From Callorhinchus milii (taxonomy: Eukaryota), in assembly GCF_018977255.1 (NCBI RefSeq), contig NW_024704812.1, positions 124,001-188,000 of the forward strand: a DNA stretch of 64,000 bases, written 5' to 3'. The notes beneath the pieces were generated by a model. That model saw only the letters and a program-made list of their open reading frames with translations. It searched no databases and was not told the origin of the DNA. This document shows positions 1-64,000 of the stretch, piece by piece. Every line of letters starts with the position of its first letter. Position 1 is the stretch's first letter. The position numbers and the translations under genes are program-made.

Positions 1-1431
1 GATGCGATTGTGGAGCTGGTGTTGACTTTCCATATTATACTAAAATTTCCCAGTTCACTGGGCATTACCAGGAAGTACACAGATTGTCCGGCTGTGGCTT
101 CTATCTGACTCTCAGTGACGGTCAGACTGAAAGCTCCCACCTGCTCTGTAATACAAAACACACACAACAGTCAATCACCAAATATCACAATGTAATAATA
201 ATATTCATCCTTGCATTTGATCTAACGTCTTATCACGTCTTTGAGATGTCTCAAAGCGCTTCACAGAATTACTGTCAGGTGAATTGACTATATTTGTGGA
301 CAAAAGTTTTGAAGGAATTATTACCCCCAGAAAAGCAATCCGCCAATCGACTAACAACCAGGTTTCTACTTACTTCTGATAAACAGAGGCGTGTGGGTAC
401 GTGTGAAGTAAGGAAACTTGCCCAACGTTTCCCCCAGAGGGGAAGCGAACCCAGATCTCTCACTTACAAGGTGAGCGCTCTTACCACTGAACTACAGAAC
501 TGCACAATTCAGAAAATGTCATTTGTTTAAGATGAAAGATAGATTTAGATAGATTTCTGCTAGAAAATAATAGCTTGGGATACAGTAGATAGACCCACAG
601 ATACACACAGAAAGACATAGAGAGAGAGGAGACAGACACATACACACACACCGAGACAGAGACACACACACAGAGGCAGAGAGAGGTACCATTTGTGTAG
701 CGACTTTCACGTCGGGAGGATATCTCATAGATAGACACACTCACAGACACAGAGAGTCACTCACACACATAGAGAGACACACACAGGCACATCCACAAAC
801 ACACAGAGAAGGAGACACAGACACACAACGACACACAGACACTCACAAACAGAGAGATACACAGACAAACAGACACTCACAAACAGAGAGATACACAGAC
901 AAACAGAGACACACATAGACACTCACAAATGCATATAGAGAGACACACACACACACTCATACACACGCGGACACAGAGACACACACACACTCACAAACTG
1001 AGAGAAACACACACACTCACAAACAGAGACACAGACACACACACTGAGAGACAGAAACACAGACACACACAGAGAGCGACACATACACAGAGACACACAG
1101 AGAGACACATACAGAAAGACATAGATACACGCGGATAGATAGAGAAACATACCGAGAGACAGACACCCCCCAGATAATCACACACACACACACACAGACA
1201 GAGACATACACTGTGAGACAGACACACACATCCAGACAGAGATATATATACACACACACACAGTGGGAGACACACACAGTATATAGTTTGGGACATGTCG
1301 AACGACTGCCAGGACGGTGGGAGATGAACGAGATGGACCTTTGCTTATGTTGTTACCAGTAACTCACCCAAATTAGTGACCAGAATGAGCAGAGCAGCCA
1401 CCAACATCCTCGCGGCTGGAAACCACCACAT
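1..1431 (-). CDS. Copy 0: 5' part of CEACAM/VSIG10L-like Ig receptor (leader exon + partial IgV exon; gene continues off the left edge)
   Basis: Leader exon 1431-1368 (64 nt, MWWFPAARMLVAALLILVTNL+G, donor gtgagt). V exon starts at 145 after ttacag and reads EQVGAFSLTVTESQIEATAGQSVYFLVMPSELGNFSIIWKVNTSSTIAS... Confidence 0.88.
190..490 (-). mobile_element. tRNA-derived SINE in the leader-V intron of copies 0 and A (also 13915-14220)
   Basis: Family tail ccttgcatttgat...ttatcacg and head accactgaactacag. Confidence 0.8.
600..1285. repeat. Compound (CA)n/(GA)n microsatellite tract, leader-V intron (also 14325-14995; shorter at 29530-29655, 44480-44505, 59650-59675)
   Basis: Direct inspection; length differs strongly between copies. 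Confidence 0.95.
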
Positions 1432-1560
1432 ATACACGTTAGGGAGAGAGACAGAGACAAACTGAATATGGGCTGTCACCTGAACGCAGGGCAGAGTCTG
1501 CTGTTAATCATTACTGTTACTGTAGAGAGACCCTGACACTGGCTCTAATGGCACCCGGTG

Positions 1561-1620
1561 CACTTTCACTTTGTCAGGAATTAATATGTTAATTTATGAG
1601 ATAAATAGATTTACTTCCTG
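1561..1620 (-). promoter_or_regulatory. Putative proximal promoter of copy 0: IRF-E (AAAGTGAAAGTG) + ETS (CAGGAAGT)
   Basis: cactttcacttt at 1561-1572 and acttcctg at 1613-1620, 130-190 nt upstream of the ATG in non-repeat sequence. Motif match only. Confidence 0.55.
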
Positions 1621-1844
1621 TAAGACACATTTTACGCCCTCACTATTTTTAATATTATTATAATAATAGTCCTTGCGTTTGACACAGCGCCTTATCACGT
1701 TTTTGAGACTTCTCAAAGTGCTTCACAGGATACACTGAGAAATGTAGTGACTGTGTTTTGTGGGAGAAACGCAGCAGCCAATTCCATACAGCAATGTTCC
1801 ACAAACAGTAGAGGATTGAGTGCCGTATTAGTTACAAAAAATTT

Positions 1845-2240
1845 TGAATAATCCTTCCATCTGATACAGCACCTTATCACATCTTCGAAACGTCTCAAAG
1901 CGCTTCACAGGATACGCTGTAAAGTGGAGTGACTGTGTGTTTTGGGGGCTGAAACATGGCAGCCAATTGCACACAGCGACGTCCCCACAAACAGTTGTGG
2001 ATTGAGTGACCACATTATTATTATTTTTTAAAAGATATTATTGCCCCCAGGAAATCGATCCCCCAATCAACTAACCCCCGGGTTCCTACTGACTGCTGAT
2101 AAACAGAGGTGTGAGTAAAAAGTGTGTGTGTGGAGTAAGGAAACTTGCTTAAGGTTTTGCCCTGACACACCTGGGAATCGAACCCAGATCCTCTCGCTTG
2201 CGAGGCGAGCGCTCTAACCCCTGAGCTACAGGGACTCCAC
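1845..2240 (-). mobile_element. tRNA-derived SINE (homologues about 15570-15960, 30220-30618, 45070-45460, 60230-60622)
   Basis: Reverse-oriented head (ctgagctacagggactcc), body, and tail (ataatcc...tgatacagcaccttatcac). Confidence 0.85.
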
Positions 2241-4679: not shown

Positions 4680-5800
4680 CAACAACAACAACAACAATAA
4701 CAACTTGTATTTACACAGCGCCCTTTACGAGGGTAGCGTCTCGGAGTGGTGGAGCCTGACGCAGAGTCAGGGAGAGACAGGGAGTAGGTGACCGTGAGCA
4801 TGGTCAAAGAGAAAGATGTTCAGTCGTGAGAAAGAGGGACGAGGATAGGAGAGGGGAGGAAAGGTGGAAAGGCGGAGAGATCGGGGGAGAGAACTCCAAA
4901 GTCTGACAATACGACCCCCCATGATGGATCAGAGGGCACGAGGGACACGCAGGAGGCCGGAGGCAGCCGAGAGGAGGCAGTGGGTAGTGGGTTGGGGGGG
5001 TCAGCAGGTCGGAGAGAGAGGTAGGGAGGTGCCAGAGCCTGAAGAGATTTGTAGATGATTGAAAGGATCTTGAAATCGATCTACGTTGTCACAGCTATCT
5101 ACTTCCTGGTGCCATTACGACGTAAATTGTGATAAATATCTTTTTGGTGCTTTCCAAGGTCCTGAAACACAATGCAGATCGGACAGACCATTACCAACAA
5201 CATTTTACACTGAACCTTTCACATCAGGAGGACGTCCCAAGGACCTGGACAGTCAGGGATTTGGATCTGAGCTGTGGGTTGGGATCAGGACGGGGTGGAT
5301 AGTGGCGATGTAGGCGTTAGGAAGGTGACCAGGTTGAGGAGGAAAGTCTTGTGACAGGCCTTGAAGGAGGTGAGGGAGTGATGGGGTGGGATGGAGGTAC
5401 TGTGGGATGGAGTTCCAGAGGGTGGGGCAGAGTAACTGAAGGCCCAACCGATGGTGGGGCAGGTGAGGCGGGGGATGTGAAGCAGGCCGGAGCCCGCTGA
5501 GCAGAGAGAGCGGACAGGTTGTTAGGGGGTATGGGGAGCTGCAGAGTTAGTTCTGGATGATCTGCAGTTTGTAGAGGGAGGCGTTGGGGAGGCCGACAAG
5601 CAGGGAGTGGGCAAAGTCAAGCCTGTTTGTGGTGAACACATGGATGAGGGCCTCGGTGGCCTGTGGTGAGAGACAGTGGCGGAGCCGGGCAATATGGCGG
5701 AGGTGGGGATGGCATAGCAGGTCATGGCACGGATGAGGGGATGAAGGACAGTTTAGGGTCGTAAAGGACAGAGGTGGGACAGCAAGAGACTGAGCCGGGC
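4680..5800 (-). mobile_element. Degenerate L2 fragments flanking cyt3 (3' UTR and cyt2-cyt3 intron); repeated in each copy
   Basis: LWNSIP, FKACHKTFLF and GWAFSxSAP-like remnants with (TTG)n tails. Confidence 0.75.
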
Positions 5801-8800
5801 TGACACACTGTCCGTGTCAGCCATTTGTTTCCTCACCATGTAAGGGCCTGAATCCTTCTGGGAGACATTGGCAGAGGAAGCCTAAAATATAACCAAACAC
5901 AGTTTAGCTATTCATTAGCAATGTCGTTAGCAGTAAATAATAATAACCATTGCATTTCATACAGTGCCTTATCACGTCTTCATAACATCTCAAAGCGCTT
6001 CACAGGATACACGGTAAAGAGTAGTGACTGTGTGGTTTCATAATAATAATAATCGTTGCATTTGATACAGTGCCTTATCACGTCTTTGAGTCGTATCAAA
6101 GAGGAGCCAATTGCCTAAGGTTTTGCCCTGTCCGGGAAACAAAACCGGATCCTCTCGCTTGAGAGGCGAGGACTCTAACCACTGAGCTACAGGACTGCAC
6201 AGGACTTACTCTGACATCAATGGTCTCGTAGTGTGGTTCACCCTCTGTCTCTTGCTGTGTTTTGGCTGGAAAATAAACAACAACTTGTTTATTCAAAGGC
6301 ACAGCCTCTGATGGTGGGATGGAGGGAACGAGGGACAAATAGGAGGCCGGTGTGGGGTGGGGGTGAGCAGGTCGGAGAGGTAGGGAGGTGCCAGGGCATG
6401 AAGGGGTTTGAAAACGAGTGAGAGGATCTTGAAATCGTAGAAAATCTTGAAAATCTACAAGTTTGTACATTTGCTGAACCGGTTAACTTGGAGAGAAATG
6501 GAGAGGGAGGGACTGATAGAGAGAGAGAGAGAGAGAAAGAGAGAGATTGGCAGTGAGAGATAGGGTTAGAGCCTGACAGAAAGACAAAGAGGGAGCGATT
6601 GAAAGAGAGAGGTGGAGATGGATGGATAGAGACTGATAGAGAGTGAGATGGAGGGTGATAGAGAGGAGATGGTGAAATGGAGTGGGAGAGACTGATAGAG
6701 AGAGAGAGAAAGATGATGGGTCAAGACTGATGGAGGAAGAGTGAGACGGAGAAGATAGAGACTGATTGAGTTTGTGACGGAGGTGGATAGAGACTAACAG
6801 AGGGAGTGTGAGACAGAGGGGAAGAGACTGATAGAGAGAGATGAAGGGGGAGAGACTGACAGTGAAAGAGAGTGAGATGAAGGGGTAGAGACTGATAGAT
6901 GGAGAGGACAGTGAGAGGGTGAGTGGCTGAGGGGGGTCTGGGCTGGTATATAAACTACAGAACATGAAGGTGAAAGGTTTTCCTGTGTATATACGGCCTC
7001 ACCTTCCTTACGTTTCCTGTAAACGTACACCACAGCGAGTGTTGCAATGACCACCACAGCCACAGCCCCCACTATTGTCCCCACTATCAGGGCCACATTC
7101 ACTGCGGAGAGAAACACCTTCACTGTCTCTCTATTAGATTATACTCTCGTAACATAGAGACCACAGCACAGACCTCATGTAAATCATAGCAATCCTCGCA
7201 TTTGATACAGCGCCTTATCACGTCGTTGTAAAGTGTCGTAACTGTATTTTGTCGGCGGAACACAGCAGCCAATTGCGCACAGCGGTGACCCACAAACAGT
7301 CGTGGATTGATTGACCAGATTTTTTGTTTTTTTGGAGGGATTATGACCCCCAGAAAGTGAACCGTCAATTGACTAACAGCGGGTTCCTACCTACTGCTGA
7401 TAAACAGAGGTGCGCGTCTGTGTGTGTATGTGTGTGTGTGTGTCTGTTGTCTGCGGTGGGGTGTACATGTCTGTCTGTGAGTTTGTGTGTGTCTGTGACT
7501 GTGTAAGTGTGTGTGTCTGTGTGTGTGTCTGTGTGTGTGTCAACATATCATAACTTACCTCCGCCTTTCAAAGTCACGTCAAATTGGAAGAAGTTCTCTC
7601 CCATTGCGTTAGTGACACGGCATTGATATGTGCCCTGATCGGTTGCCTGGAATTTACTGATGAGCAGTTTAGAGAAGGTTAGTCCTGAGGTGATGTTGAA
7701 CTTGCCGTCAGAGCCAGTGATGGAGTTGTCTTCCTTCGACCATGTAAAGTGTGCGGGCAGCAGGCCAGGGTCTGACACCCGCACTGTGTCTGTCAGTGAC
7801 ACGTCTAAGGTCACATCTGCCTCCTTCCCCACTTCCACCTGAGGCTCAGACCCTGACGCTCTCTGGGGTTTATCTGTGTAACAGCACAGACGGCGTTCAG
7901 CAAAACAGCAACACAGTCACCCCAACAGTCAGTAGGAATAATAATAATCCTCCTGTTTGATACATCGCCTTATCACGCCATCGAGACATCTTAAATCCCA
8001 TCTAAAGACCTTCCTCTTCGACCAACCGCACCTTCAGCCACCCTCCCACCCCAAAACCCACCCCACTGCCCTCCACCCCTCCTGACCACAACTCCCAGCT
8101 CAGGTCCAAAAACCCTGACTGTGCAGCGTCCCGGGACGTGTTTGCGACGTGAAGGGCGCTATACAAGTGTAATTTGTCATCGTTGTTGTTGTTCAGCCCT
8201 CAAGTCCTCACCAATGACTATAGAGCATTGACTGTCAGAGACAACATGGCGTCCAACACATGTGAAGATCTCTCGGGAGCTGAGCTGATCCTTTGTGATG
8301 GTGACATTCCCCTCGTTTGTCTCAATGACAATCGTCTGTCCGACCTTCAGCTGAAGGACAGTGTCTGGCACCCCACCAGCCCAGGAGCACATCAACACCA
8401 ATGCTGTTCCTTTATCTGCTGCTCCGCATGTGATCTGCTGTGTGGGAGCCCCTTGAACAAGGCAAAGACAAACAGTCCAGTTATTGGCTCCACCTTGAGT
8501 TGTCCCCACCCTCGCCCGGCTCCACTGGCTCCCCATCCCTCAGAGGATACTGTTCCAGTTCCTGGTGCTCAGCTTTAAAGCCCTCCATGGCCTCACTCCT
8601 CCCTCCCTACCTCTGTGACCTCCTCACCCCTGACCAACCTCCCCTTATTGGGCTCCTCCTTGCTCCATGACCCCCGCCCGGCCCTCCTCACCATCAGCGG
8701 TCGGGCCTTCAGTCTCTCTGCCCCCACCCTCTGAAACTCCCACAATCCCTCTGCCACATCTCCCTCACCTCCTTCAAAACTTATCTCAAGATCCTCCTCT

Positions 8801-11800
8801 TTGACAGACTGTGCCTTCGTTCACCCTCCTACACCCATCCTCCCCACCCTCCAACCCTCCTGATAGCAACCCCCAGCTCAGGTGTGGGTCCCTGACTGTC
8901 CAGTGCCTTGGGACATCCTCCTGATGTGAAAGCCACTGTGTAAATGTCATGTGTTGTTTACACAGTGCCAATTTTGACTGAGATCTAACTCACTGTACAC
9001 GAGGATTGAAACCTTCTCCGTGCGGCTAATCGTGGTGTAATCGCTCTCCACATTGCAAGTGTAATCCCCGCTGCTTTGGAACGTGAGGCTCTCTATAGGC
9101 AGCTGTGAGGTGTTGCCGGCAATGACCGCGGTGTTATGTGTCCACCTGTAGTTACACTCTGGGAAACATTTCGTCTGACAGTTGAGTGTCACTAAATCTC
9201 CCTCCTTCCCACAGTAGTGGCCTGAGAACAAGCTGCCACATAGCTCCAGCCCGATCACTTCAACTGTGGGTGGATCAGGGCCATCTGAAAGAATAAGCAT
9301 TAAACTATGGCATAGATAGATAAATGGATGGCAGATGATAGCGTGAGAGAAACAGCCTTTTTACATGTATCACAGACCTCTGACTGTTTGTGGGTCGCTG
9401 CTGTGTGCAATTGGCTGCTGCGTTTTGCTCATAACATATACAGTCAATTCACTTTACAGTGTATTCTGTGAAGCGTTTCAGTCGTCCAGAAGACGTGAAA
9501 AGCGCTGTATCAAATGCAAGGATTATTATATTATTGACAGAGCAAAACGTCGGCCCAGTTTCCCTACTCCCAAACACACCCTCTGTTTACTGAGCAGTAA
9601 TTAGGAACCCGGTTATTAGTCGATTGGTGAGAATCAAACCAAAGTCCTCTCACTTGCGAGGTGAGGGCTCCAACCACTACAGGACCCCACTGTTTGTTTC
9701 TCTATTCACAGCATCAAACCCCAATGTAGAATATTCCAGCATTGCATTGGAGCTTCAGTCTGGACTACATGAGTTCCAAGTACTGACGTGAGGCCACAAC
9801 CTTCTGACTTATAGAGAGCTGAGCCAGGCTGGAACAAGTAGGGATATACGTGGGCCAACTGCACTGTCCTGTTCAGCTCACGTTGATCTGGTTTTAACAC
9901 CACAGCAAATATACTCACAAGTTATCACCAGCTTCACTGGTTTGCTGCTGTCACTGCTCACCAGGTTACTGGCCGTGCAGATAAACCCTCCACTGTCGTT
10001 CCTGTGTACGGGGCTGATTGTCAGAGTGCTATTATCTGCAGATAGTGTGTAACGTGGGGTTACAGGTAACGGGTGTCCACCCAGTGCCCAGGAATAGGTG
10101 GGGAACGATCCCATCGCTGTACATCTCAGTGTCACTGTGTCCTTATTCTCTATCATCATCTCCCCGTCTGGACTCAGGCTGATGCTCACATTGGACACCA
10201 GGGCTGTAAGATAAAGCGTTTCATTTCATTCAGACACAAAGCTTAACACAAAGCTGTTCTGATTCACTTTACTAACACTGCACTGCATTTCCGACACTGT
10301 TAGTGTTATTATTTTTCCCCCTTAATTCAGACATCAAGTGCTCTGGGACGCTATCCTGCGTGAGGGGGCTATATCAATGTAAGCTGTTGTTGTTATAATA
10401 ATAATCTTTGCATTTGATACAGCGACTTATCACATCTTCGAGACATCTGAAAGCACTTCACAGAATATACTGTGTAACTTGTGGGTGAAACGCGGCTTTC
10501 AATTGAGCCCAATGACATCCCCAGAAACAGTTGTGGATTGAGTGACCAAATTATTATTATTATTTTATTTTTTTGAAGTAATTATTGCCCCCGGAAAAGT
10601 GATCCACCAATCGACTAACAACTGGGTTCCTACTGACTGCTGTTAAACAGAGACGTATGGAGTAGGAAACCTGCCCATCGTTACGCCAGGAATCAAACCC
10701 TCTCACTTTCGAGGCCAGTGCTCTAACCCCTGAGCTACAGGTCTCCGTACATAGTATGCAGTTCTGTAGTTAGTAGTATTGTTACACCAGTAGTTATGCG
10801 AACAACAATCTGGGCCAAGAAAAGTAAAAATTGTGGGGCGATTTGGGCATTTTTGACACATTTTGCAGAAAATGGCGGGGAGTTGATCGGGGATTTTGAT
10901 GAACATGTTTTCACTTTATTGATAAAAAGTGAACATGTTACATTGTTGGGGAAAAATATAATTGCTTCTTTACCGAGGACTGGGTGGGTTTTTTTTTGGG
11001 GCGGTGTGGGCGAGAGAGATACACACTCACACACACACAGGGAGAGTCACACACTCACAGAGAGAGGCACACACACTCAGAAACACAGAGACAGTCTCAC
11101 ACACACACACACACACAGGGAGAGTCACACACTCACAGAGAGAGACACACACTCAGAAACACAGAGACAGACACACACACACACACACACACACACAGGG
11201 AGAGTCATACGCTCACAGAGACGCACATACAGAAACACAGAGAGACACACACTCTCACAGAGAGACACACACACTCAGAGACTCAGAGTGAGGCACACAC
11301 ACAGACACGGAGAGCAACACACACATTTGTATAGCGCCTTTCACGTTGGGAGCATATCCCATAGATTGAGACGCACTCACAGACACAGAGAGACACTCAC
11401 AAACACATAGAGAGACACACAAAGGGACATTCACAAACACACAGACGGAGACGCAGACACACAACGACACTCACAAACAGAGATACACAGTCACACAGAG
11501 ACACACATAGCTCACAAATGCATATAGGGAGACACACACACACACTCATTCACACACGGACACAGAGACACACTCACAAAGAGAGAGACACACACACTCA
11601 CACACAGACGCAAACAATCACAACAGCGGTGAATCCAAGTGAAGCCCATTTGCGTGTCCTGAGCCGAGCGCCCCACAGTGACGTCAGTGAGGCCCGTGGG
11701 CCGGAAAGTACATTATTATTTGTACCGGGTTTCTAATAATAATAATGACAATACTCGTATTTGATATAGCGCCTTATCCCGTCGTTGAGACTCTTGTATT

Positions 11801-14800: not shown

Positions 14801-15145
14801 TACACAGAGACACACAGAGAGACACATACAGAAAGACATAGATACACGCGGATAGATAGAGAAACATACCGAGAGACAGACACCCCCAGATAATCACACA
14901 CACACACACAGACAGAGACATACTGTGAGACAGACACACACATCCAGACAGAGATATATATATACACACACACAGTGGGAGACACACACAGTATATAGTT
15001 TGGGACACGACATGTGAACGACTGCCAGGACGGTGGGGATGAACGAGATGGACCTTTGCTTATGTTGTTACCAGTAACTCACCCAATTAGTGACCAGAAT
15101 GAGCAGAGCAGCCACCAACATCCTCGCGGCTGGAAACCACCACAT
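5099..15145 (-). CDS. Copy A: CEACAM/VSIG10L-like ITAM receptor, 6 Ig domains (V-A-A-B-C-D-TM-cyt), about 688 aa if leader/V indels are errors; otherwise a pseudogene
   Basis: Exons: leader 15145-15083 (63 nt, 1 short); V 13867-13544 (+1,+1,-2 indels, internal stop as assembled); A 12456-12172; A 10203-9919; B 9284-8994; C 8451-8212; D 7873-7559; TM 7101-7003; cyt1 6265-6210; cyt2 5881-5837; cyt3 5161-5099. All have GT-AG boundaries; Ig exons are phase 1-1. Confidence 0.8.
10390..10745 (-). mobile_element. tRNA-derived SINE unique to copy A
   Basis: Complete tail-body-head in reverse orientation. Confidence 0.8.
11010..11620. repeat. Compound (CA)n/(GA)n tract unique to copy A
   Basis: Direct inspection. 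Confidence 0.95.
11921..12150. mobile_element. Penelope-like inverted-repeat remnant (hairpin), unique to copy A
   Basis: Arms of about 90 bp (11921-12010 and 12027-12114) around a 16-nt loop. The sequence ...ctcagc.ggtcaggcagcatct.tggagag...gacccttcatcagaa resembles, from recall, the abundant shark Penelope-type repeat. Confidence 0.7.
12700..12745 (-). mobile_element. hAT-Charlie-like MITE terminus (also about 27970-28020)
   Basis: Reverse complement cagggtgggccaactggtggcccacgggccgcatccggcccc resembles MER58/Charlie-type ends (from recall). Confidence 0.55.
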
Positions 15146-18197: not shown

Positions 18198-18347
18198 NNN
18201 NNNNNNNNNNNNNNNNNNNNNNNNNNNNNNNNNNNNNNNNNNNNNNNNNNNNNNNNNNNNNNNNNNNNNNNNNNNNNNNNNNNNNNNNNNNNNNNNNNNN
18301 NNNNNNNNNNNNNNNNNNNNNNNNNNNNNNNNNNNNNNNNNNNNNNN
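18198..18347. other. Assembly gap (150 N)
   Basis: N run. Confidence 0.99.
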
Positions 18348-51300: not shown

Positions 51301-51416
51301 TTTTGGAGGGATTATGACCCCAGAAAGTGAACCGTCAATTGACTAACAGCGGGTTCCTACCTTCTGCTGATAAACAGAGGTGCACATCTGTGTGTGTATG
51401 TGTGTCTATGTGTGTC

Positions 51417-51450
<34 letters not shown>

Positions 51451-54400
51451 TGTGGGTGTGTGTCTGTGTGTGTGTCAAAATATCATAACTTACCTCCGCC
51501 TTTCAAAGTCACGTCAAATTGGAAGAAGTTCTCTCCCATTGCGTTAGTGACACGGCATTGATATGTGCCCTGATCGGTTGCCTGGAATTTACTGATGAGC
51601 AGTTTAGAGAAGGTTAGTCCTGAGGTGATGTTGAACTTGTCGTCAGAGCCAGTGATGGAGTTGTCTTCCTTCGACCATGTAAAGTGTGCGGGCAGCAGGC
51701 CAGGGTCTGACACCCGCACTGTGTCTGTCAGTGACACGTCTAAGGTCACATCTGCCTCCTTCCCCACTTCCACCTGAGGCTCAGACCCTGACGCTCTCTG
51801 GGGTTTATCTGTGTAACAGCACAGACAGTGTTCAGCAAAACAGCAACACAGTCACCCCAACAGTCAGTAGGAATAATAATAATCCTCCTGTTTGATACAG
51901 CGCCTTATCACGCCATCGAGACATCTTAAATCCCATCTAAAGACCTTCCTCTTCGACCAACCGCACATTCAGCCACCCTCCCACCCCAAAACCCACCCCC
52001 CTGTCCCACCCCTCCTGCCCCACTCCCAGCTCAGGTCCAAAAACCCTGACTGTGCAGCGTCCTGGAACATCTTTGCGACGTGAAGGGCGCTATACAAGTG
52101 TAATTTGTCATCGTTGTTGCTGTTCAGCCCTCAAGTCCTCACCAATAACTATAGAGCATTGACTGTCAGAGACAACATGGCGTCCAACACATGTGAAGAT
52201 CTCTCGGGAGCTGAGCTGATCCTTTGTGATGGTGACATTCCCCTCGTTTGTCGCATTGACAATCGTCTGTCCGACCTTCAGCTGAAGGACAGAGTCTGGC
52301 ACCCCACCAGCCCAGGAGCACATCAACACCAATGCTGTTCCTTTATCTGCTGCTCCGCATGTGATCTGCTGTGTGGGAGCCCCTTGAACAAGGCAAAGAC
52401 AAACAGTCCAGTTATTGGCTCCACCTTGAGTTGTCCCCACCCTCGCCCGGCTCCACTGGCTCCCCATCCCTCAGAGGATACTGTTCAAGATCCTGGTGCT
52501 CAGCTTTAAAGCCCTCCATGGCCTCACTCCTCCCTCCCTACCTCTGTGACCTCCTAATCCCTGACCAACCGGTCCGCTCCCTCTGCTTAGCGGGCTCCGG
52601 CCTGCTCCATGTTCCCCGCCCGCCCATCCCCTTCAGCCTCTCTGACCCACCCTCTGAAACTCCCACAATCCCTCTGCCACGCCTCCCTCACCTCCTTCGA
52701 AACCTATCTCAAGATCCTCCTCTTCGACAGACCGTGCCTTCGGTCACCCTCCTACACCCATCTCCCTGCCCTCCAACCCTCCTGATAGCAACCCCAGCTC
52801 AGATGTGGGTCCCTGACTGTCCAGCGCCTTGAGACATCCTCCTGACGTGAAAGCCACTGTGTAAATGCCATGTGTTGTTATTTAGACAGTGCCAATTTTG
52901 ACTGAGATCTAACTCACTGTACACGAGGATTGAAACCTTCTCCGTGTGGCTAATCGTGGTGTAATCATTCTTCACATTGCAAGTGTAATCCCCGCTGTTG
53001 TTGAACGTGAGGCTCTCTATAGGCAGCTGTGAGGTGTTGCCGGCAATGACTGTGGTGTTATGTGTCCACCTGTAGTTACACTCTGGGAAACATTTCGTCT
53101 GACAGTTGAGCGTCACTAAATCTCCCTCCTTCCCACAGTACTGTCCTGGGACCAAACTGTCACATATCACCTGCCCACTCATATATACTGTGGGTGGATC
53201 AGGGCCATCTGAAAGAAAAACATTAAGTGATGACATAGATAGATAAATGGGTGGCAGATGATAGTGTGAGAGAAACAGCCTTTTTACATGTATCACAGAC
53301 CTCCGACTGTTTGTGGGTCCCTCCTGTGCGCAATTGGCTGCCGTCCCCCGACCCACCCACCCCACCATTGGCGGGAGAGCTTCAGCCACTCTGCCCCCAA
53401 CCTCTGGAATCCTATCCCCCAGTCATTCCGCTTCACGCCCTCCTTAGCCTCCTTCAAGTCACGCCTCAAGACCCTCCTCTTCGACCATGCCATCGGCCAT
53501 CCCCTTCCCCGCCCCTCCCTTCTCCCCCCGTGACTCCAGCTCGGGTCTGAAATGCTGTCACTGTCCAGTGCCTTGGGACATCCTCCCGATGTGAAACACG
53601 CTATACAAATGTAATCCTGTTGTTGTTGTTGTGTTTTCATCCATAAAATATACAGTCAATTTCACTTTACAGTATATTCCTGTGAAGTGATTTGAGACGT
53701 GAGGAGGTGTTTTTTTTGGAGGGGTTAATACATTCGGAAAAGTGATCTGGCAATCGACTAACAAGGGTTCCCGCTTACTGTTAGGTAACAACAAAATACA
53801 ACAACAATAATATTACATTTATAGGGCGTCCTTAACGTCGGGAGGACGTCCCAAGACATTGGCGCTGCTAACAGTGGGGTGTATGTGTGTGGGGGGGTGG
53901 GGGTGGGGCGAGTGTTGGGTGGAGTAATGTACCTGCCTAAGCTTTCGTCCTGACCTGCGCGGGAATCAAACTCAGGTCCTCTCCGCTTGATAAAGGCGAT
54001 ATATCAAGTGCAAGAATGAATTATTATTCTGATGATCATGACTATGATCATTATTATTGTTATTATCTTTACTGTTATTGGCAGCTCAGGTCACGTGAGG
54101 CTGACTTTGGGTCATGGAGTTTAAAGCGAGTCGGGTTCCTGCTCCTGGTCCTAAACTCCCTCTCGGGCTCAAGTGTGGGTGTTGCAGTCTGGTGGGGAGA
54201 TTAGGTTTGTCTGTGGGGCCCTCTACAGTCAAGTGGCCGATTGACACTCAGATAGTGATGGGATCTTTAACCTGAACAGGCAGATAGTTTAACGTCTCAT
54301 CCAAACAGCGGCTCTTTAATGATAATAACAATAGTGGAGTCCTGTTGCTCAGTGGTTAGAGCATTTGCCTCGTAAGTGAAGTTGAATTCAATTCCCATCA

Positions 54401-57400
54401 GGGTGCGAATGCTTGGGCAAGTTTCCTTACTCCACACGCCTGATAATAAACCCTCCAGAAAGAAACTAATAGTAAATTGGTCACTTCAATCCACGGCTGT
54501 TTTGGGACGACGCTGTGTGCAATTGTGTTTCACCCACAAATATACAGTCAATTCACTTTACAATATATTCTGTGAAGCATTTTGAGATTCTCAAAGACGT
54601 AAAGAGCGCGGCATCAAATGAAAGGTTTATTATATTATTTATAGGGCAAAACATTGGGCAAGTTTCCTTACTCCGCACGCCTCTGTTTACCTCGCAGTGT
54701 GTGGGGACCCAGTTGTTAGTCGACTGATGGATCGCTTTTCCGAGGGTAAAAATTCCTTCAAAAATAATATTAATGAATTGGTCCCTGAATCCCCAACTGT
54801 TTGTGGGACACTGCTGTGTGCAATTGGTTGACATTTTATGGAGTGGTTATTACCTCCAGAAAGTGATCCGGCAATGAACTGACAAGTAGGTTCCCACTTA
54901 CTGCAGGTCAGCAGAGCCATGTCTATGTGTGTTTCTATGAGTGGAGGAAGGACTATATGAGTTCCAAGTACTGACGTGAGGCTTGAACCCACAACCTTCT
55001 GCTTATAGAGAGCTGAGCCAGGCTGGAACAAGTAGGGATATACGTGGGCCAACTGCACTGTCCTGTTCAGCTCACGTTGATCTGGTTTTAACACACACAG
55101 CAAATATACTCACAAGTTATCACCAGCTTCACTGGTTTGCTGCTGTCACTGTTCACCGGGTTACTGGCGTGCAGATAAACCCTCCACTGTCGTTCCTGTG
55201 TACGGGGCTGATTGTCAGAGTGCTATTAGCTGCAGACAGTGTGTAACGTGGGGTTACAGGTAACGGGTGTCCACCAGTGCCCAGGAATAGGTGGGGAACA
55301 ATCCCATCGCTTGTACACCTCAATGTCGTTGTGTTTTATTCTCGATAAATATCTCCTTGTCTGGACTCAGGCTGATGCTCACATTGGACAGCAGAGCTGT
55401 AAGATAAAGTGTTTCATTTCATCCGGATTTACTTTACTTAACACAAAGCTGTTCTGCTTCAGTTCAAGATCCTGGTCCTCACCTTGAATGTCCTCTACAA
55501 CCTCACTCCTCTTCCTTACCTCCGCTCCCTCTGCTCAGCGGGCTCCGGCCTGCTTCATGCCCCCGCCCACCTGCCCCACCATCAGCGGTTGGGCCTTCAG
55601 CCTCTCTGCCCCAATCCACGACTGTTTGTGGGACACTGCTGTGTGCAATTGGCTGCAGAGTTTCGCCCACAAAATAGACCGGCAATTCACTTTACAGTAT
55701 ATCGTCCCAAAATACATCACTTTGCACTTCTCCACATTAAACTTCATCATGTCTGCCCATGTTACCAGTCTGTCTATGTCCTCTTGCAGTCTGTTACTAA
55801 CCTCCTCACTATTTACTACTTTTCCAGCCTAGTATCATGTGTGTGGCTCCTGATCTCACACACACTAAACTCTGTACCCCAGTCCTGCCCAGGCTCCAAA
55901 CTTGGAATTTGCCAAGGCTGCAGACGTGGAAATTGTGCTCCCTATACCCAAGGCCATCTTAAAGACCTATCTCAAGGCCCTCCTCTTCGACCGACCATGC
56001 CTTCAGTCATCCTCCTATCCCGACCCTCCCCACCCTCCACCCCTCCTGATCCCAATCCACAGCTCGGGTGCAGATCCCTGACTGTCCTCCTGACGTGAAA
56101 ACCACTGTGTAAATGTCATGTATTGTTTACACCATGACATTTTTGACTGAGATCTAACTCACTGTACACGAGGATTGAAACCTTCTCCGTGCGGCTAATC
56201 GTGGTGTAATCATTCTTCACATTGCAAGTGTAATCCCCGCTGTTGTTGAACGTGAGGCTCTCTATAGGCAGCTGTGAGGTGTTGCCGGCAATGACTGTGG
56301 TGTTATGTGTCCACCTGTAGTTACACTCTGGGAAACATTTCGTCTGACAGTTGAGGGTCATCAAATCTCCCTCCTTCCCACAGTACTGTCCTGGGACCAA
56401 ACTGTCACATATCACCTGCCCACTCACAATAAAGGTGAGTGGATCAGGGCCATCTGAAAGAAAAAGCATTAAACTATGACATAGATAGATAAATGGATGG
56501 CAGATGATAGTGTGAGAGAAACAGTCTTTTTACATGTATCACAGACCTCTGACTGTTTGTGGTTCGCTGCTGTGTGCAATTGGCTGCTGCGTTTTGCTCA
56601 TAACATATACAGTCAATTCACTTTACAGTGTATTCTGTGAAGCGTTTCAGTCGTCTTGAAGACGTGAAAAGCGCTGTATCAAATGCAAGGATTATTATAT
56701 TATTGATAGAGAAAAACGTCGGCCAAGTTTCCCTCCTCCCAAACACACCGTCTGTTTACTGAGCAGTAATTAGGAACCCGGTTATTAGTCGATTGGTGGA
56801 ATCAAACCAAAGTCTCTCACTTGCGAGGTGAGGGCTCCAACCACGACAGGACCCCACTGTTTGTTTCTCTATTCACAGCATCAAACCCCAATGTAGAATA
56901 TTCCAGCATTGCATTGGCGCTTCAGTCTGGACTACATGAGTTCCAAGTACTGACGTGAGGCCACAACCTTCTGACTTATAGAGAGCTGAGCCAGGCTGGA
57001 ACAAGTAGGGATATACGTGGGCCAACTGCACTGTCCTGTTCAGCTCACGTTGATCTGGTTTTAACACAACAGCAAATATACTCACAAGTTATCACCAGCT
57101 TCACTGGTTTACTGCTGTCACTGCCCACCAGGTACTGGCCGTGCAGATAAACCCTCCACTGTCGCTCCTGTGTACGGGGCTGATTGTCAGAGTGCTATTA
57201 TCTGCAGACAGTGTGTAACGTGGGGTTACAGGTAACGGGTTTCCATCCAGTGCCCAGGAATAGGTGGGGAACGATCCCATCGCTGTACATCTTAGTGTCA
57301 CTGTGTCTTTATTCTCGATAAATATCTCCTTGTCTGGACTCAGGCTGATGCTCACATTGGACACCGGAGCTGTAAGATAACGCATTTCATTTCATTCAGA

Positions 57401-59832
57401 AACTTGTTCAATTCACTTCACTGACACAGACTGTTCAGAGTCACTTTGCTGAACCCTACACTTTATTTCTGACGCTGTTTGTTATGATTCACTGTTTATT
57501 CAGGTCTCAGTCTGGCTCATTTGGTAGCACAATTTTATGGTTTAAAGTCACACTCTGGGAGCTCACAGTCCAGGTTTATTGGCTTAATGAATGAGATGAA
57601 ATGGGCCCTTTACTGCAGTCTATCAGGAAGGCAGAGCAAGTGTGTCTCTGCTCCTCTCTCTCTCCTCCTCTCTCCCCCACCACCCACTCCCCAACCCCAC
57701 TCTCTCATTCCCTCTCTCCCCTCTCACTCTTCCCGACCTTGCCTCTCTTTCCCACTCTCTCCCCCTTCTATTTCCCCTCTCCCTCCCCTTCTCTCCCCCC
57801 CCCTCTCTCCCCTCTCCCTTCCCCTCTCTCCCCTTATCTTTCATGCCTCCCTCTTCTCCTCTCTCTCTCCCCCTCTCTCTCCCAATCTCTCTCCCAATCT
57901 GCAGTGGTAGGAGCCCAAGGACACAGTTGGTAAGAGACTCATTTGCCTTCCTGACAGACTGCAGTAAAGGCTCTGCTCGCTCGGATTCTCCCAAACGGCT
58001 CCTGCCACTGCCCTGTGAGGACGTTCACCAGGGAGGGAGGGAGGGGTGGGGGAGTGGAAGTTGGAACATTGCAAATGGTCGCCGGCCGCACAAAATCACC
58101 TCCGGGCAGCTGACAGCCCATGTACCGCCTGTTGGACCACACTGAGCTGAATGAATGAAATGAAATTGGTCCGGGGGCCATCACACCCTCCTGTTTGCCC
58201 CTCGGCCCCTTCCGCTCCATCATCGGTGGCTGTATTTTCAGCTGTTACGCCCTGAAAGTCTGTCACTCTCTCCCTGTCAATCCCTCCGTCTCCCCCTCTC
58301 GTTCCCCACCTTCAAATCCCACCTAATATCCTTCCTTTTTGATTGGTTTACCGTCACCTCCCCCTCTCCTCTCCACCGGCTCGGGTCAGATTCTGCCCTA
58401 TCAAGTGCTCTCGGACGCTACCCCACGTGAGGGATGTGGTGTAAATGTAAGTTTGTTGTTTGTTTACTCACTGTGAACACGCAGTTGTAAAGCTGCTGTG
58501 AGCTGATCCGTGGTTTAATTCAAACACAGTCACTGAGTACGAACCGGAATCAGCCGGAGTCACTGTGTCCAGACGTAGAGTGGCATTGTTGGGGTAAAGC
58601 TCAGCCCGACCCTGGTAGTCTCCATAGTACTTCACTGTTGTTCCCTGTGCTGCTGCGATTGTGGAGCTGGTGTTGACTGTCCATGTTATAGTAAAACTTC
58701 CCTGTTCACTGGGCATTACCAGGAAGTACACAGATTGTCCGGCTGTGGCTTCTATGTGACTCTCAGTGACGGTCAGACTGAAAGCTCCCACCTGCTCTGT
58801 AACACAACACACACAACAGTCAATCTCCAGGAATCTCACAATATAAAAATAATAATATTAATAATAATCCTGCAGTTATTGTTCAACATCGTCTCGCAAG
58901 TGAGGAGACCCAGATTTGATCCCCGGGCGGAAGGGCGAAACGTTGGGCAGTTTCCTTACTTCACACACACGCCTCTGTTTCTTCGCAGTAAGTAGGAACC
59001 CGGTTGTTAACCGATTAGAGGCTTTTCGGGATAACAATTCCTTCAAAAAAGTAATAAATTGATGACTCAAACCATGACTGTTTGCGGGCACTACAGTGCA
59101 CACTGTATAAATGGAATGATTATTAATAGTATATAATATCTTGCATTTCATATAGTGCCTTATCACGTCTTTGAGACGTCTGAAAGCGCTTCACGGGTGT
59201 ACTGTAAATTGAATTATTGTATATTTTGTGGGTGAAACTTGGCAGCCAATTGTGCACAACAGTCCCACAAAGAGCCGTGGATTGAGTGACCTTTTTTTAT
59301 TTTGAAGGATTATTATCCCCAGAGAAGCGATCTGCCAATCGACCAACAAGTGGTTCCTACTTATTGTTCGGTAAATAGAGGCGCGTGTGTGTGGAGTAAG
59401 GAAACTTGCCCAACCTCTCGCCCTGTGCCGCCCGGGAATCAAACCCAGGACTCTCACTTGCGAGGCGAGTGCTCCAACCACTGAGCTACAGGACTCCACA
59501 ATTCAGAACAATTCTGTGGAAACACGACCTCAGTGAGAGAGTGGGAAACGGATCCCGAAGGAGACAGACGGCGGAAGCAGAAAATGTCATTTATTTCAAG
59601 ATCAAATTGGATAGATTTCTGCAAGAAAATAATATCTCAGGATACAGTATATAGACACACACACACAGACACACAGTATATAGTTTGGGACACGACATGT
59701 GTAGCGACTGCCAGGACGGTGGAGATGAACGAGATGGACCTTTGCTTATGTTGTTACCAGTAACTCACCCAAATTAGTGACCAGAATGAGCAGAGCAGCC
59801 ACCAACATCCTCGCGGCTGGAAACCACCACAT
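48306..59832 (-). CDS. Copy D: CEACAM/VSIG10L-like ITAM receptor, 7 Ig domains; V, A1 and A2 frameshifted as assembled
   Basis: Exons: leader 59832-59769; V 58796-58472 (+1); A1 57369-57086 (-1); B1 56453-56163; A2 55396-55114 (net -2); B2 53208-52918; C 52382-52143; D 51808-51494; TM 51070-50972; cyt1 49919-49864; cyt2 49088-49044; cyt3 48368-48306. Nearly identical to copy C. Confidence 0.8.
49219..49658 (-). mobile_element. Same young L2 insertion in copy D
   Basis: Same junctions and GATACA repeats (49213-49218, 49659-49664). Confidence 0.9.
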
Positions 59833-63000: not shown

Positions 63001-63464
63001 AACTCCTGATAAATAACATTAACTTCTCAGTGAGCCGATAAGTCACAACAACAACAACTTGTATTTACACAGCGCCCTTTACGAGGGTAGCGTCTCGGAG
63101 TGGTGGAGCCTGACGCAGAGCCAGGTGGAGGGGAGAGACAGGCAGAAGGTGACCGTGAGCATGGTCAAAGAGAAAGATTTTCAGTCGTGATCTAAAAGAG
63201 GGGGAAGGATAGGAGAGGGGAGGAAAGGGGGAAAGGCGGAGTGATCGGGGGAGAGAACTCCACAAAGTCTGACAATACGACCCCCCATGATGGATCAGAG
63301 GGCACGAGGGACACGCAGGAGGCCAGAGGCAGCCGAGAGGAGGCAGCGGCTAGTGGGTTGGGGGGGTCAGCAGGTCGGAGAGAGAGGTAGGGAGGTGCCG
63401 GAGCCTGAAGGGATTTGTAGATGATTGAAAGGATCTTGAAATCGATCTACGTTGTCACAGCTAT

Positions 63465-63527
63465 CTACTTCCTGGTGCCATTACGACGTAAATTGTGATA
63501 AATATCTTTCTGGTGCTTTCCAAGGTT
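63465..63527 (-). CDS. Copy E: terminal cytoplasmic exon (NLGKHQKDIYHNLRRNGTRK*); rest of gene lies beyond the right edge
   Basis: Acceptor ttgtgtttcag, then 63 nt homologous to cyt3 of copies A-D (one D>N change and one synonymous change). Confidence 0.82.
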   Translation of the reverse strand, partial: NLGKHQKDIYHNLRRNGTRK

Positions 63528-63961
63528 CTGAAACACAATGCAGATCAGACAGACCATTACTAACAACAACATTTTACACTGAACCTTTCACATCAGGAGG
63601 ACGTCCCAAGGACCTGGAGAGTCAGGGATTTGGATCTGAGCTGTGGGTTGGGATCAGGAAGGGATGGAGGGTGGGGAGGGAGGGGGTAGGAGGGTGACCA
63701 GGTTGAAGAGAAAAGTCTTGAGACAGGCCTTCAAGGAGGTGAGGGAGTGAGTGAAACCGAGGGATTGTGGGATGGAGTTCCAGAGGGTGGGGCAGAGTAA
63801 CTGAAGGCCTGACCGATGGTGGGGCAGGTGAGGCAGGGGATGTGAAGCAGGTCGGAGCCCACTGAGCAGAGGGAGAGGACAGGTTGTTAGGGGTTAGGAG
63901 GTCACAGAGGTAGTGGGGAGCAAAGCCATGGAGGGCTTTGAAGGTGAGGACCAGGATCTTG

Positions 63962-64000
63962 AACAACAACAACAACAACAAGATTCCATTTATAAAGCGC
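63962..64000 (-). mobile_element. 3' tail of the young L2 family at a different site (cut by the window edge)
   Basis: (caa)n-aagattccatttataaagcgc is identical to the start of 33999/49219, but the left flank is different. Confidence 0.65.

What the first reader, a model, noticed from the sequence alone, without database searches (positions are those of the whole stretch)
1..64000. At least six near-identical tandem copies of a 7-Ig CEACAM/VSIG10L-like receptor
Seen: head-to-tail copies run off both window edges. The N-terminal V-A-B-A-B block is CEACAM-like (Cys-less N domain, YGPDP junction). The C domain (CxWxGGxP with an extra A-G strand Cys pair) and the D domain are VSIG10/VSIG10L-like. 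Inference: a lineage-specific immune receptor expansion whose architecture links the CEACAM and VSIG10L families.
Basis: partly seen in the sequence, partly recalled or inferred. Interest (0 to 1): 0.72.

Follow-up and report, generated by a model that had tools for sequence, protein, structure and literature searches.

The report
Elephant-shark CEACAM-like activating receptor array
This stretch of elephant-shark DNA is part of a long head-to-tail array of recently copied genes for a cell-surface immune receptor with its own activation signal. The outer half resembles the CEACAM family and the two domains next to the membrane resemble VSIG10, a combination also present in sharks and frogs but not described in the papers I could search.

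Summary
The tandem array is real. The window is Callorhinchus milii scaffold MU249885.1:124,001-188,000. It holds four complete minus-strand genes and two partial ones, spaced 13.7-15.2 kb apart, and the array runs for at least 175 kb. So "six" holds only if the partial genes are counted.

- **Gene models:** three genes have seven Ig exons (V-A-B-A-B-C-D) and one has six (V-A-A-B-C-D). Only G3 (44663-33086) reads open: 12 exons, 785 aa, ending in a canonical ITAM (YMDL-x7-YHNL).
- **Broken copies:** the other three carry clustered 1-bp indels that look like unpolished long-read errors.
- **N gaps:** all three lie about 480 bp downstream of a stop codon, so no reading frame crosses them.
- **CEACAM-like part:** A and B domains match human CEA and CEACAM1 best (E 4e-39, 2e-16). 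The N domain has no cysteine.
- **VSIG10-like part:** the C domain has few relatives, mainly VSIG10L2 and "VSIG10-like" proteins. A C-D model best matches Ig3-Ig4 of VSIG10.
- **Spread:** the composite architecture also occurs in four sharks and three frogs, some with ITIM tails, so it is ancient. Only the expansion is lineage-specific.

This is a new variant of a known kind. Neighbouring windows of this scan noted the same family. Copy number, expression and synteny remain untested.

The parts
33086..44663 (-). Gene G3, the only copy with an intact reading frame: 12 exons, 785 aa (signal peptide, V, A1, B1, A2, B2, C, D, TM, three tail exons)
   Evidence: Spliced model with a GT donor after every exon but the last, an AG acceptor before every exon but the first, and phase-1 Ig exons. 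The public record annotates a 785-aa product starting at the same base.
44600..44663 (-). G3 leader exon (MWWFPAARMLVAALLILVTNL, then a phase-1 donor)
   Evidence: The leader is the same as in RefSeq models P0022 and P0069 and differs by one residue in P0023.
43285..43608 (-). G3 N (V-type) domain exon. It has no cysteine and keeps the R...D pair and the YPNNATL motif.
   Evidence: Pfam V-set/I-set. PDB sequence hits are weak: CD276, CAR and CEACAM1/8 at E 6e-6 to 5e-3.
41895..42179 (-). G3 A1 exon (CEACAM A-type C2 domain)
   Evidence: 87% identical to A2. The PDB search was run on A2.
40970..41260 (-). G3 B1 exon (CEACAM B-type C2 domain, begins GPDP, six Cys)
   Evidence: 94% identical to B2. 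The PDB search was run on B2.
39923..40207 (-). G3 A2 exon
   Evidence: Best PDB hits are CEA at E 4e-39 and CEACAM1 at E 4e-26.
37727..38017 (-). G3 B2 exon
   Evidence: Best PDB hit is CEA at E 2e-16, aligned to its B domains.
36951..37190 (-). G3 C exon: VSIG10/VSIG10L2-type Ig domain (C-x12-CSWAGGVP ... FTCVGRH ... C)
   Evidence: (no PDB sequence relative)
36296..36610 (-). G3 D exon: I-set domain without the B-strand Cys. Together with C it forms a module like VSIG10 Ig3-Ig4.
35769..35867 (-). G3 transmembrane exon (no charged residue in the helix; ends RKRKE)
34645..34700 (-). G3 tail exon c1 (AKTQQETEGEPYYETIDVR)
33824..33868 (-). G3 tail exon c2 (ASSANVSQKDSGPYM): carries the first tyrosine of the ITAM, and the intron splits YM|DL
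33086..33148 (-). G3 tail exon c3 (DLGKHQKDIYHNLRRNGTRK, then stop): second half of the ITAM
48306..59832 (-). Gene G4, seven Ig exons. There are six 1-bp indels in V (58.5 kb), A1 (57.1 kb) and A2 (55.1-55.4 kb). B1, B2, C, D, TM and tail exons are open.
18828..29812 (-). Gene G2, seven Ig exons. L to B2 are open. There are six 1-bp indels in C, D, TM, c1 and c3.
5099..15145 (-). Gene G1, six Ig exons (V-A-A-B-C-D, no B1). Small indels lie in the leader and V exons, and one stop appears in the V frame. A1 to c3 are open.
3..1431 (-). Gene G0, fragment: leader exon (1431-1360) and the 5' half of the V exon (151-3). The rest lies beyond the left edge.
63468..63533 (-). Gene G5, fragment: last tail exon only. 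The rest lies beyond the right edge.
18198..18347 (.). Assembly gap in the 3' flank of G2, 480 bp past its stop codon
32473..32602 (.). Assembly gap in the 3' flank of G3, 483 bp past its stop codon
47693..47822 (.). Assembly gap in the 3' flank of G4, 483 bp past its stop codon

Best explanation
The window is a 64-kb piece of a tandem array at least 175 kb long, on an unplaced elephant-shark scaffold. Each unit encodes a type I membrane receptor in this order:
- signal peptide;
- a cysteine-free CEACAM-type N (V) domain;
- CEACAM-type A and B C2 domains (A-B-A-B, or A-A-B in the shorter form);
- a membrane-proximal pair of Ig domains (C-D) of the type found as Ig3-Ig4 of VSIG10 and as repeats in VSIG10L2;
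- an uncharged transmembrane helix;
- a short tail with its own canonical ITAM, split over two small exons.

Shown here: the anatomy, the splice structure, the domain affinities, the recent duplication, and relatives with the same ectodomain plan but ITIM-type tails.

Inferred mechanism: these are activating, probably endocytic, leukocyte receptors. The N domain binds a ligand, either a host partner or a microbial adhesin. Src-family kinases then phosphorylate the ITAM, and Syk-family kinases dock and trigger activation or uptake. Members with ITIM-like tails elsewhere in the genome act as the inhibitory partners, as CEACAM1 does for CEACAM3.

Inferred history: the array grew by unequal crossing-over of a 14-15 kb unit and by duplication of an A-B exon pair inside the gene. 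It is partly homogenised by gene conversion. Most amino-acid differences between copies fall on the C-C'-C'' and F-G parts of the N domain.
For: **Array**
- Self-alignment at 13.7-15.2 kb offsets with 90-98% identity.
- Exon maps of four complete and two partial genes.
- The same family occurs at 75.8-103 kb, 162-207 kb and 219-251 kb of MU249885.1. The window position was confirmed by exact match.

**Gene model**
- G3 gives a 785-aa open reading frame with canonical splice sites. The public annotation has a product of the same length and start.
- The leader and the c1-c2-c3 tail splicing recur in RefSeq models P0001, P0069, P0070 and P0072.

**CEACAM affinity**
- A domain: CEA E 4e-39, CEACAM1 E 4e-26.
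- B domain: CEA E 2e-16, on its B domains.
- V-A model: top PDB match is mouse CEACAM1b at 7e-17. More than 15 CEACAM/PSG entries are in the top 30 of the AlphaFold Swiss-Prot library.
- The N domain is Cys-free, the junction reads YGPDP, and the Ig exons are phase 1.

**C-D module**
- C has only 21 hits in 1.84 billion representatives, led by VSIG10L2 and 'VSIG10-like' proteins.
- Conserved motif.
- The structure model has pLDDT 85. Best matches are VSIG10 residues about 212-410 at E 3e-13 to 3e-11.

**Signalling**
- ITAM YMDLGKHQKDIYHNL.
- Houndshark relative P0010 has VEYAQI and VIYAQV ITIMs. Elephant-shark P0002 and sawshark P0003 have repeated D-x-Y-A/S-x-V motifs.

**Diversification**
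- 17 of 21 variable V codons change the residue, and 15 of those 17 lie at positions 35-57 or 89-101.
- pN/pS is 1.4-2.7 in V against 0.5-0.9 in A, B and C.
Against: - Three of the four complete genes have frameshifts in this assembly, and four of nine complete V exons seen on the scaffold have small indels. If these are real, most copies are pseudogenes.
- No transcript data could be reached, so cell type and expression are unknown.
- The N domain alone is only weakly CEACAM-like by sequence (E about 1e-3). The V-A model ranks HEPACAM and HEPACAM2 slightly above the CEACAMs.
- The excess of replacement changes in V is not significant with five intact copies (bootstrap 0.20).
- Synteny with the CEACAM locus cannot be tested on an unplaced scaffold.
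- No inhibitory-type exon lies in the window or in the fetched parts of the scaffold. The pairing therefore rests on a protein from another contig.
Confidence: 0.78

Rival explanations
1. Mostly dead array: the units are real, but most are pseudogenes decaying after a burst of duplication, and only one or a few copies such as G3 are functional.
For: - G1, G2 and G4 each carry several frameshifting indels, and G1 has a stop in the V frame.
- Four of nine complete V exons on the scaffold have indels.
- RefSeq had to build models that skip broken exons or bridge two units.
Against: - Between units 3 and 4 there are 69 indels of 1-2 bp against 163 substitutions. 50 of the 69 sit next to an identical base, and most fall in a 7-kb patch, introns included. 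In G4 exons there are 6 indels against 9 substitutions. Such ratios fit uncorrected long-read errors in a repeat where short reads cannot polish, not natural decay.
- Every exon of the broken copies keeps its AG/GT splice sites (the G1 leader's ATG lies beside an indel), and the unbroken exons show no stops.
- The five indels in the G1 V exon cancel out to the original length.
Confidence: 0.22
2. Assembly artefact: one or two real genes were copied several times by mis-assembly or by uncollapsed haplotypes, so the 'array' overstates the copy number.
For: - The scaffold is unplaced.
- Three gaps sit at the same position in the unit, so two contigs are exactly one unit long.
- A 5.4-kb tract of units 3 and 4 differs by only 18 substitutions.
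- Patches are dense with indels.
- The array changes orientation between 207 and 219 kb.
Against: - Units differ in structure: six or seven Ig exons, and 13.7-15.2 kb in length.
- Units differ by 1-9% in substitutions.
- There are at least five different intact N-domain sequences.
- One ungapped contig spans more than a whole unit (1-18197).
- Family members were already predicted from the older 2014 assembly (XP_007883578/9).
Confidence: 0.07
3. Not an immune CEACAM at all: an adhesion molecule of the HEPACAM/VSIG10 kind that happens to carry tyrosine motifs and works in cell-cell adhesion in epithelia or nervous tissue.
For: - The V-A model's best Swiss-Prot matches are HEPACAM and HEPACAM2.
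- C-D best matches VSIG10.
- Automatic names on the scaffold include 'VSIG10-like'.
Against: - The tail has a canonical ITAM with 7-residue spacing, and relatives have ITIMs.
- Multi-copy tandem expansion with N-domain variation is typical of immune receptors, not of conserved single-copy adhesion genes.
- By sequence, the A and B domains are far closer to CEA and CEACAM1 than to anything else in the PDB.
Confidence: 0.08

Closest known systems
Mammalian CEACAM1 / CEACAM3-type paired receptors (CEA family)
   Same: - Cys-free N domain followed by alternating A- and B-type C2 domains joined by YGPD.
- Leader split between exon 1 and the N exon, with phase-1 Ig exons.
- Tail built from several small exons and carrying an ITAM (CEACAM3-like). 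Relatives carry ITIMs (CEACAM1-like).
- Tandem gene clusters with variable N domains.

Sources; family features as described in PMC13278318 and PMC5112662.
   Different: - Two extra membrane-proximal Ig domains (C, D) that are not A or B type and have no CEACAM match.
- B domains have six cysteines.
- The ITAM is fully canonical, not the 'ITAM-like' motif of CEACAM3.
- N-domain sequence similarity to mammalian CEACAMs is weak.
- Synteny is untested.
VSIG10 (Ig3-Ig4) and VSIG10L2 (repeated C-type domains)
   Same: - The C-D pair superposes on the last two Ig domains of VSIG10 from four vertebrate classes (TM 0.61-0.71 by query, 23-26% identity).
- The C domain shares four Cys, CxWxGGxP and CxGxH with VSIG10L2 domains, including the human ones.
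   Different: - VSIG10 and VSIG10L2 are not among the top 30 matches to the V-A model.
- C domains of the shark and frog receptors form their own group, apart from VSIG10L2 and 'VSIG10-like' domains (93/94 support).
- VSIG10L itself did not appear among the best matches.
- From my own knowledge, not tested here: VSIG10 proteins lack a CEACAM-type N-A-B block and an ITAM, and are single-copy genes.
Shark and frog proteins with the same plan (sawshark P0003 'CEACAM5-like', houndshark P0010 'CD22-like', horn shark P0012 and catshark P0081 'VSIG10-like', frog P0059, P0021, P0011)
   Same: - V-A(n)-B-C-D-TM in the sharks.
- V-C-D in horn shark (P0012 is a 243-aa model whose D match is cut at its end).
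- A-C-D in the frogs, with a V match as well in P0011.
- The C-D linker IDxPQ and 15 columns are invariant.
   Different: - Those proteins carry ITIM or ITIM-like YAQV-type tails, or other tails. The elephant-shark array carries an ITAM.
- None is known from a dozen-copy tandem array.
HEPACAM / HEPACAM2
   Same: Best AlphaFold Swiss-Prot matches of the V-A model (E 1e-19 to 1e-17, 24-26% identity).
   Different: - In sequence searches of the PDB, the A domain goes to CEA and CEACAM1, and HEPACAM is not among the listed hits.
- From my own knowledge, not tested here: HEPACAM has only V plus one C2 domain, no ITAM, and is single-copy.
ITAM-bearing CEACAM1-like 'decoy' receptors of reptiles and Xenopus group 1/2 Ceacams
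   Same: Species-specific expansions of ITAM-bearing members next to ITIM-bearing ones. A-B exon pairs are amplified inside genes (PMC13278318, PMC5112662).
   Different: Those papers describe only IgV and IgC (A, B) domains. A VSIG10-type C-D module is not mentioned in them.

Membership tests
CEACAM (CEA) family | N-terminal IgV-like domain without the canonical disulfide | tested here: met
   No Cys in residues 23-129 of G3. V-set/I-set by Pfam. R64 and D83 are invariant across the family alignment.
CEACAM (CEA) family | IgC2 domains of A and B subtype, alternating, closest to those of CEA and CEACAM1 | tested here: met
   A: CEA E 4e-39, CEACAM1 E 4e-26, aligned to A domains. B: CEA E 2e-16, aligned to B domains. 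The junction reads YGPDP.
CEACAM (CEA) family | N-domain sequence closest to CEACAM N domains | tested here: inconclusive
   By sequence, CD276 and CAR score as well as CEACAM1/8, at E 6e-6 to 5e-3. By structure, the V-A model hits HEPACAM at 1e-19 and CEACAMs at 5e-17. The top PDB match is CEACAM1b.
CEACAM (CEA) family | Gene structure: leader split, with its last part on the N exon; phase-1 Ig exons; tail in several small exons carrying ITAM or ITIM | tested here: met
   The leader exon encodes 21 residues and the N exon starts with the EQVGA end of the leader. All Ig introns are phase 1. There are three tail exons with an ITAM. Criteria as stated in PMC13278318 and PMC5112662.
CEACAM (CEA) family | Location in the conserved CEACAM locus (neighbours such as LIPE, CNFN, PAFAH1B3, XRCC1, BCL3) | not testable with these tools
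   The scaffold is unplaced and 260 kb long. All genes called in the four stretches fetched (about 132 kb of the 260 kb) are Ig family members.
VSIG10 / VSIG10L2 family | C-type Ig domain with four Cys, CxWxGGxP and CxGxH | tested here: met
   (human, sturgeon, cichlid and eel VSIG10L2 aligned).
VSIG10 / VSIG10L2 family | Whole-protein architecture and N-terminal domains of VSIG10 type | tested here: not met
   Only C-D matches (VSIG10 residues about 212-410). VSIG10 is absent from the top 30 matches of the V-A model. The C domains fall in a separate group.
ITAM-bearing activating immunoreceptors | YxxL/I - x6-8 - YxxL/I in the cytoplasmic tail | tested here: met
   YMDL-GKHQKDI-YHNL with spacing 7, in G3 and in RefSeq models.
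ITAM-bearing activating immunoreceptors | Tyrosine phosphorylation and Syk/ZAP-70 recruitment; expression on leukocytes | not testable with these tools

The most novel reading that the evidence does not exclude
The V-A-(B)-C-D receptors of cartilaginous fish and frogs preserve an ancestral jawed-vertebrate gene, or a very old fusion of two neighbouring genes. Its outer half gave rise to the CEACAM/HEPACAM lineage and its membrane-proximal half to the VSIG10/VSIG10L/VSIG10L2 lineage.

This would explain why, in human, members of the two groups lie near each other on paralogous chromosome regions: CEACAM18 with VSIG10L on 19q13, and HEPACAM with VSIG10L2 on 11q24. Those locations are from my memory and were not checked here. 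It would also give the CEACAM family, whose origin is still open, a concrete precursor.
Probability: 0.18. Interest if true: 0.75.

Novelty: new variant of a known kind. Interest (0 to 1): 0.55.

Why it matters
CEACAMs are among the fastest-evolving vertebrate immune and adhesion receptors, and several human pathogens use them as entry points. Their origin and their early form are poorly known.

- **State of the literature:** for cartilaginous fish, the papers I found cite only a little-skate EST (PMC3628338, PMC4079198). The searchable library holds no paper that pairs CEACAM with Callorhinchus in a relevant way, or that links VSIG10L2 with CEACAM evolution.
- **What is added:** in a holocephalan, an ITAM-bearing branch is already expanded to a dozen or so tandem copies. 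Paired ITAM and ITIM forms therefore already exist in cartilaginous fish.
- **The composite architecture:** this early branch carries a VSIG10-type two-domain stalk shared with sharks and frogs. VSIG10, VSIG10L and VSIG10L2 have almost no known biology, and this gives a testable link between them and a well-studied receptor family.
- **A practical warning:** the public annotation of this locus is a patchwork of chimeric and truncated models named CEACAM5-like, PSG4-like, VSIG10-like and titin-like.

Tried and rejected
- **ITAM in single reading frames:** only chance matches turned up, because the real ITAM is split by an intron. It was found through the RefSeq tail and splice-site reading.
- **G1 V domain:** I first read it as strongly diverged (61% identity). 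The nucleotide alignment shows 93.5% identity with compensating 1-bp indels, so I dropped that reading.
- **Positive selection on the N domain:** pN/pS was 2.7 with four copies. It fell to 1.4 with five copies and is not significant, so I report it only as a tendency.
- **Flanking-intron divergence:** the values of about 0.2 are alignment artefacts and I discarded them.
- **Exact look-ups of P0070 and P0002:** nothing was on record.
- **Region-restricted homology search with sawshark C-D:** it found only one more protein (catshark), which reflects a limit of the word index.
- **Inhibitory-type TM and tail exons:** none were found in the window or the fetched loci.
- **Pfam on long plus-strand and repeat-derived reading frames:** nothing was found.
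- **PDB sequence search with the C domain:** no relative was found, so the link needed the large protein library and a structure model.
- **Considered and rejected:** CD22/Siglec, hemicentin and titin identities suggested by automatic names. They reflect generic Ig similarity only.


Full report
**What the window is**

The sequence has vertebrate composition (48% GC, CpG observed/expected 0.50) and three runs of N.
- Exact protein look-ups identify it as Callorhinchus milii, assembly GCA_018977255.1, unplaced scaffold MU249885.1 of 259,846 bp.
- A fetched locus matches the window base for base at the expected offset, so the window is 124,001-188,000 of that scaffold.
- Earlier notes of this scan had already suggested elephant shark.

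**The repeat**

A self-comparison shows head-to-tail copies at offsets of 13.7-15.2 kb.

| Units compared | Identity |
|---|---|
| 1 and 2 | 96% and 91% |
| 2 and 3 | 97.8% |
| 3 and 4 | 97.6% |

All coding exons lie on the minus strand. Mapping the exons of the best copy onto the window gives four complete genes:

| Gene | Leader to last exon |
|---|---|
| G4 | 59832-48306 |
| G3 | 44663-33086 |
| G2 | 29812-18828 |
| G1 | 15145-5099 |

There are also two fragments. G0 has only its leader and half of its V exon at 1431-3. G5 has only its last exon at 63533-63468.

The array goes on outside the window.
- Family members fill 75.8-103 kb, 162-207 kb and 219-251 kb of the scaffold.
- The last block is in the opposite orientation.
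- Two neighbouring windows of this scan were noted for the same family.

**The gaps**

The N runs at 18198-18347, 32473-32602 and 47693-47822 each lie 480-483 bp downstream of the stop codon of G2, G3 and G4. They are 2.7-3.1 kb upstream of the next leader.
- No exon and no reading frame crosses a gap.
- The flanks are collinear with the two units that have no gap at that place.
- I did not fill them or look up their letters.
- Because the gaps sit at the same position in the unit, two contigs are exactly one unit long. Unit order and number therefore depend on scaffolding.

**Gene model**

G3 splices into a 785-aa open reading frame. Every exon but the last is followed by GT, every exon but the first is preceded by AG, and all Ig introns are phase 1.
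- The exons are leader, V, A1, B1, A2, B2, C, D, TM and three tail exons.
- The public record annotates a 785-aa product starting at the same base.
- The leader and the c1-c2-c3 tail recur in RefSeq models from the scaffold.
- The transmembrane helix has no charged residue.
- The tail reads ...EPYYETIDVRASSANVSQKDSGPYMDLGKHQKDIYHNLRRNGTRK. YMDL-x7-YHNL is a canonical ITAM, split YM|DL by an intron.
- G1 lacks B1 and is V-A-A-B-C-D, like RefSeq XP_042201587.
- A1/A2 are 87% and B1/B2 94% identical, with conserved introns. This points to a recent duplication of an A-B exon pair.

**Broken copies**

G4 (V, A1, A2), G2 (C, D, TM, c1, c3) and G1 (leader, V) carry small indels, almost all of 1 bp.
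- Units 3 and 4 differ by 163 substitutions but by 69 indels of 1-2 bp. 50 of these sit next to an identical base.
- Most of those indels fall in a 7-kb patch that includes introns. Another 5.4 kb differs by only 18 substitutions.
- In the G1 V exon the indels cancel out to the original length.
- This pattern fits uncorrected long-read errors better than decay. I cannot prove that without reads, so I keep "many copies are pseudogenes" as a rival at about 0.2.
- Gnomon reacted by building chimeric models. P0069 joins the 5' exons of G2 to the 3' exons of G1. P0001 joins the next unit's 5' exons to the 3' exons of G4.

**Domain affinities**

| Part | Main result |
|---|---|
| A domain | Best PDB hits CEA (E 4e-39) and CEACAM1 (4e-26), on their A domains |
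| B domain | Best PDB hit CEA (2e-16), on its B domains |
| N domain | No cysteine; keeps the R/D pair and a YPNNATL motif; weak sequence hits only (CD276, CAR, CEACAM1/8) |
| V-A model (pLDDT 89) | Swiss-Prot models: HEPACAM/HEPACAM2 (1e-19 to 1e-17), then many CEACAM/PSG (from 5e-17); top solved structure is mouse CEACAM1b |
| C domain | No PDB sequence relative; only 21 hits in 1.84 billion representatives |
| D domain | I-set domain that has lost the B-strand Cys in all members |
| C-D model (pLDDT 85) | VSIG10 of Xenopus, zebrafish, mouse and human, residues about 212-410 (E 3e-13 to 3e-11, 23-26% identity, TM 0.61-0.71), then VSIG10L2 |

For the C domain, the hits after the elephant-shark and sawshark relatives were VSIG10L2 (cichlid 8e-10, eel, sturgeon, primates 5e-6). 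"VSIG10-like" fish and frog proteins, a frog "CEACAM1-like" and a houndshark "CD22-like" followed. The four Cys, the W, GGxP and CxGxH are conserved throughout, human VSIG10L2 included. In the model, the extra Cys pair sits on the first and last strands. No CEACAM appears in the top 30 matches of the C-D model, and VSIG10L itself did not appear either.

**Spread of the architecture**

Domain-by-domain phmmer searches and an alignment show the following:

| Species | Protein | Plan |
|---|---|---|
| Sawshark | P0003 | V-A-A-A-B-C-D |
| Houndshark | P0010 | V-A-A-B-C-D |
| Horn shark | P0012 (243-aa model, D match cut at its end) | V-C-D |
| Catshark | P0081 | C-D relative |
| Three frogs | P0059, P0021, P0011 | A-C-D, with a V match as well in P0011 |

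- 15 columns are invariant, including the linker IDxPQ.
- In a tree of C-type domains, the shark and frog receptor domains form one side of a 93/94-supported split against the VSIG10L2 and "VSIG10-like" domains. The composite plan is therefore old, and only the tandem expansion is recent.
- Tails differ. The elephant-shark array has ITAMs. Houndshark has ITIMs (VEYAQI, VIYAQV). Sawshark and a second elephant-shark gene, P0002, on another contig have repeated D-x-Y-A/S-x-V motifs. P0002's ectodomain is 89% identical to the array model P0023.
- No inhibitory-type exon lies in the window.

**Variation between copies**

Among five intact N exons, 17 of 21 variable codons change the residue. Of those 17, 15 lie at positions 35-57 or 89-101, the C-C'-C'' and F-G parts. 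pN/pS is 1.4 (2.7 with four copies) against 0.5-0.9 in the A, B and C domains, but the bootstrap is not significant.

**Reading**

The best-supported explanation is a recently expanded array of activating receptors of the CEACAM family, in an old branch that carries a VSIG10-type stalk. These receptors are paired with ITIM-type relatives. The signalling steps and the cell type are inferred from the motifs and from what is known of CEACAM3 and CEACAM1 (PMC13278318, PMC5112662).

**Literature**

Cartilaginous-fish CEACAMs are known only from a little-skate EST (PMC3628338, PMC4079198). The CEACAM papers I read describe only IgV and A/B IgC domains. No paper in the library connects VSIG10L2 or VSIG10L with CEACAM evolution. 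I therefore rate this a new variant of a known kind, of moderate interest.

Noticed in passing
window 435-497, 2163-2235, 6124-6195, 19847-19918, 34559-34630, 49778-49849 and 11 more: Seventeen tRNA-like matches, probably heads of tRNA-derived SINEs, lie in introns and intergenic DNA of every unit. One starts 15 bp after tail exon c1.
   Followed up: partly
window 20340-20488, 35126-35644, 50331-50847: GA-rich tandem repeats (periods 36 and 76 bp) lie in the intron after the TM exon. Their length differs between units. They keep the TM-exon reading frame open for up to 457 codons, which could mislead ORF-based annotation.
   Followed up: partly
window 5102-29812 (P0069) and 48306 to beyond the right edge (P0001): RefSeq models bridge two neighbouring units. 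They skip exons that carry indels and are named differently (VSIG10-like, CEACAM5-like, PSG4-like, titin-like) although they belong to one family.
   Followed up: yes
L001 (MU249885.1:219,789-251,404) versus the window: Units at 219-251 kb of the scaffold are on the opposite strand to those at 75-207 kb. The array is either inverted there or the scaffold is mis-oriented.
   Followed up: no
window 33743-33868 (and the same place in the other units): RefSeq model P0023 reads through the donor of tail exon c2 and ends after 'GPYM' plus 27 residues. That isoform would carry only the first ITAM tyrosine.
   Followed up: partly
window 11021-11273: A CA/GA-rich 78-bp tandem repeat lies in the A1-A2 intron of G1. 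This part of the unit has no counterpart in the seven-Ig units.
   Followed up: no
G3 residues 240-301 and 432-493 (B1, B2 exons 41260-40970, 38017-37727): Each B domain has six cysteines (…VICDSLVPGQYC…LNCQTKCFPEC…YTC), four more than the canonical Ig pair. The sawshark relative keeps most of them.
   Followed up: no
L003 19546-45240 versus window 64000-38306: The fetched public locus and the window are not letter-for-letter identical over their overlap.
   Followed up: no
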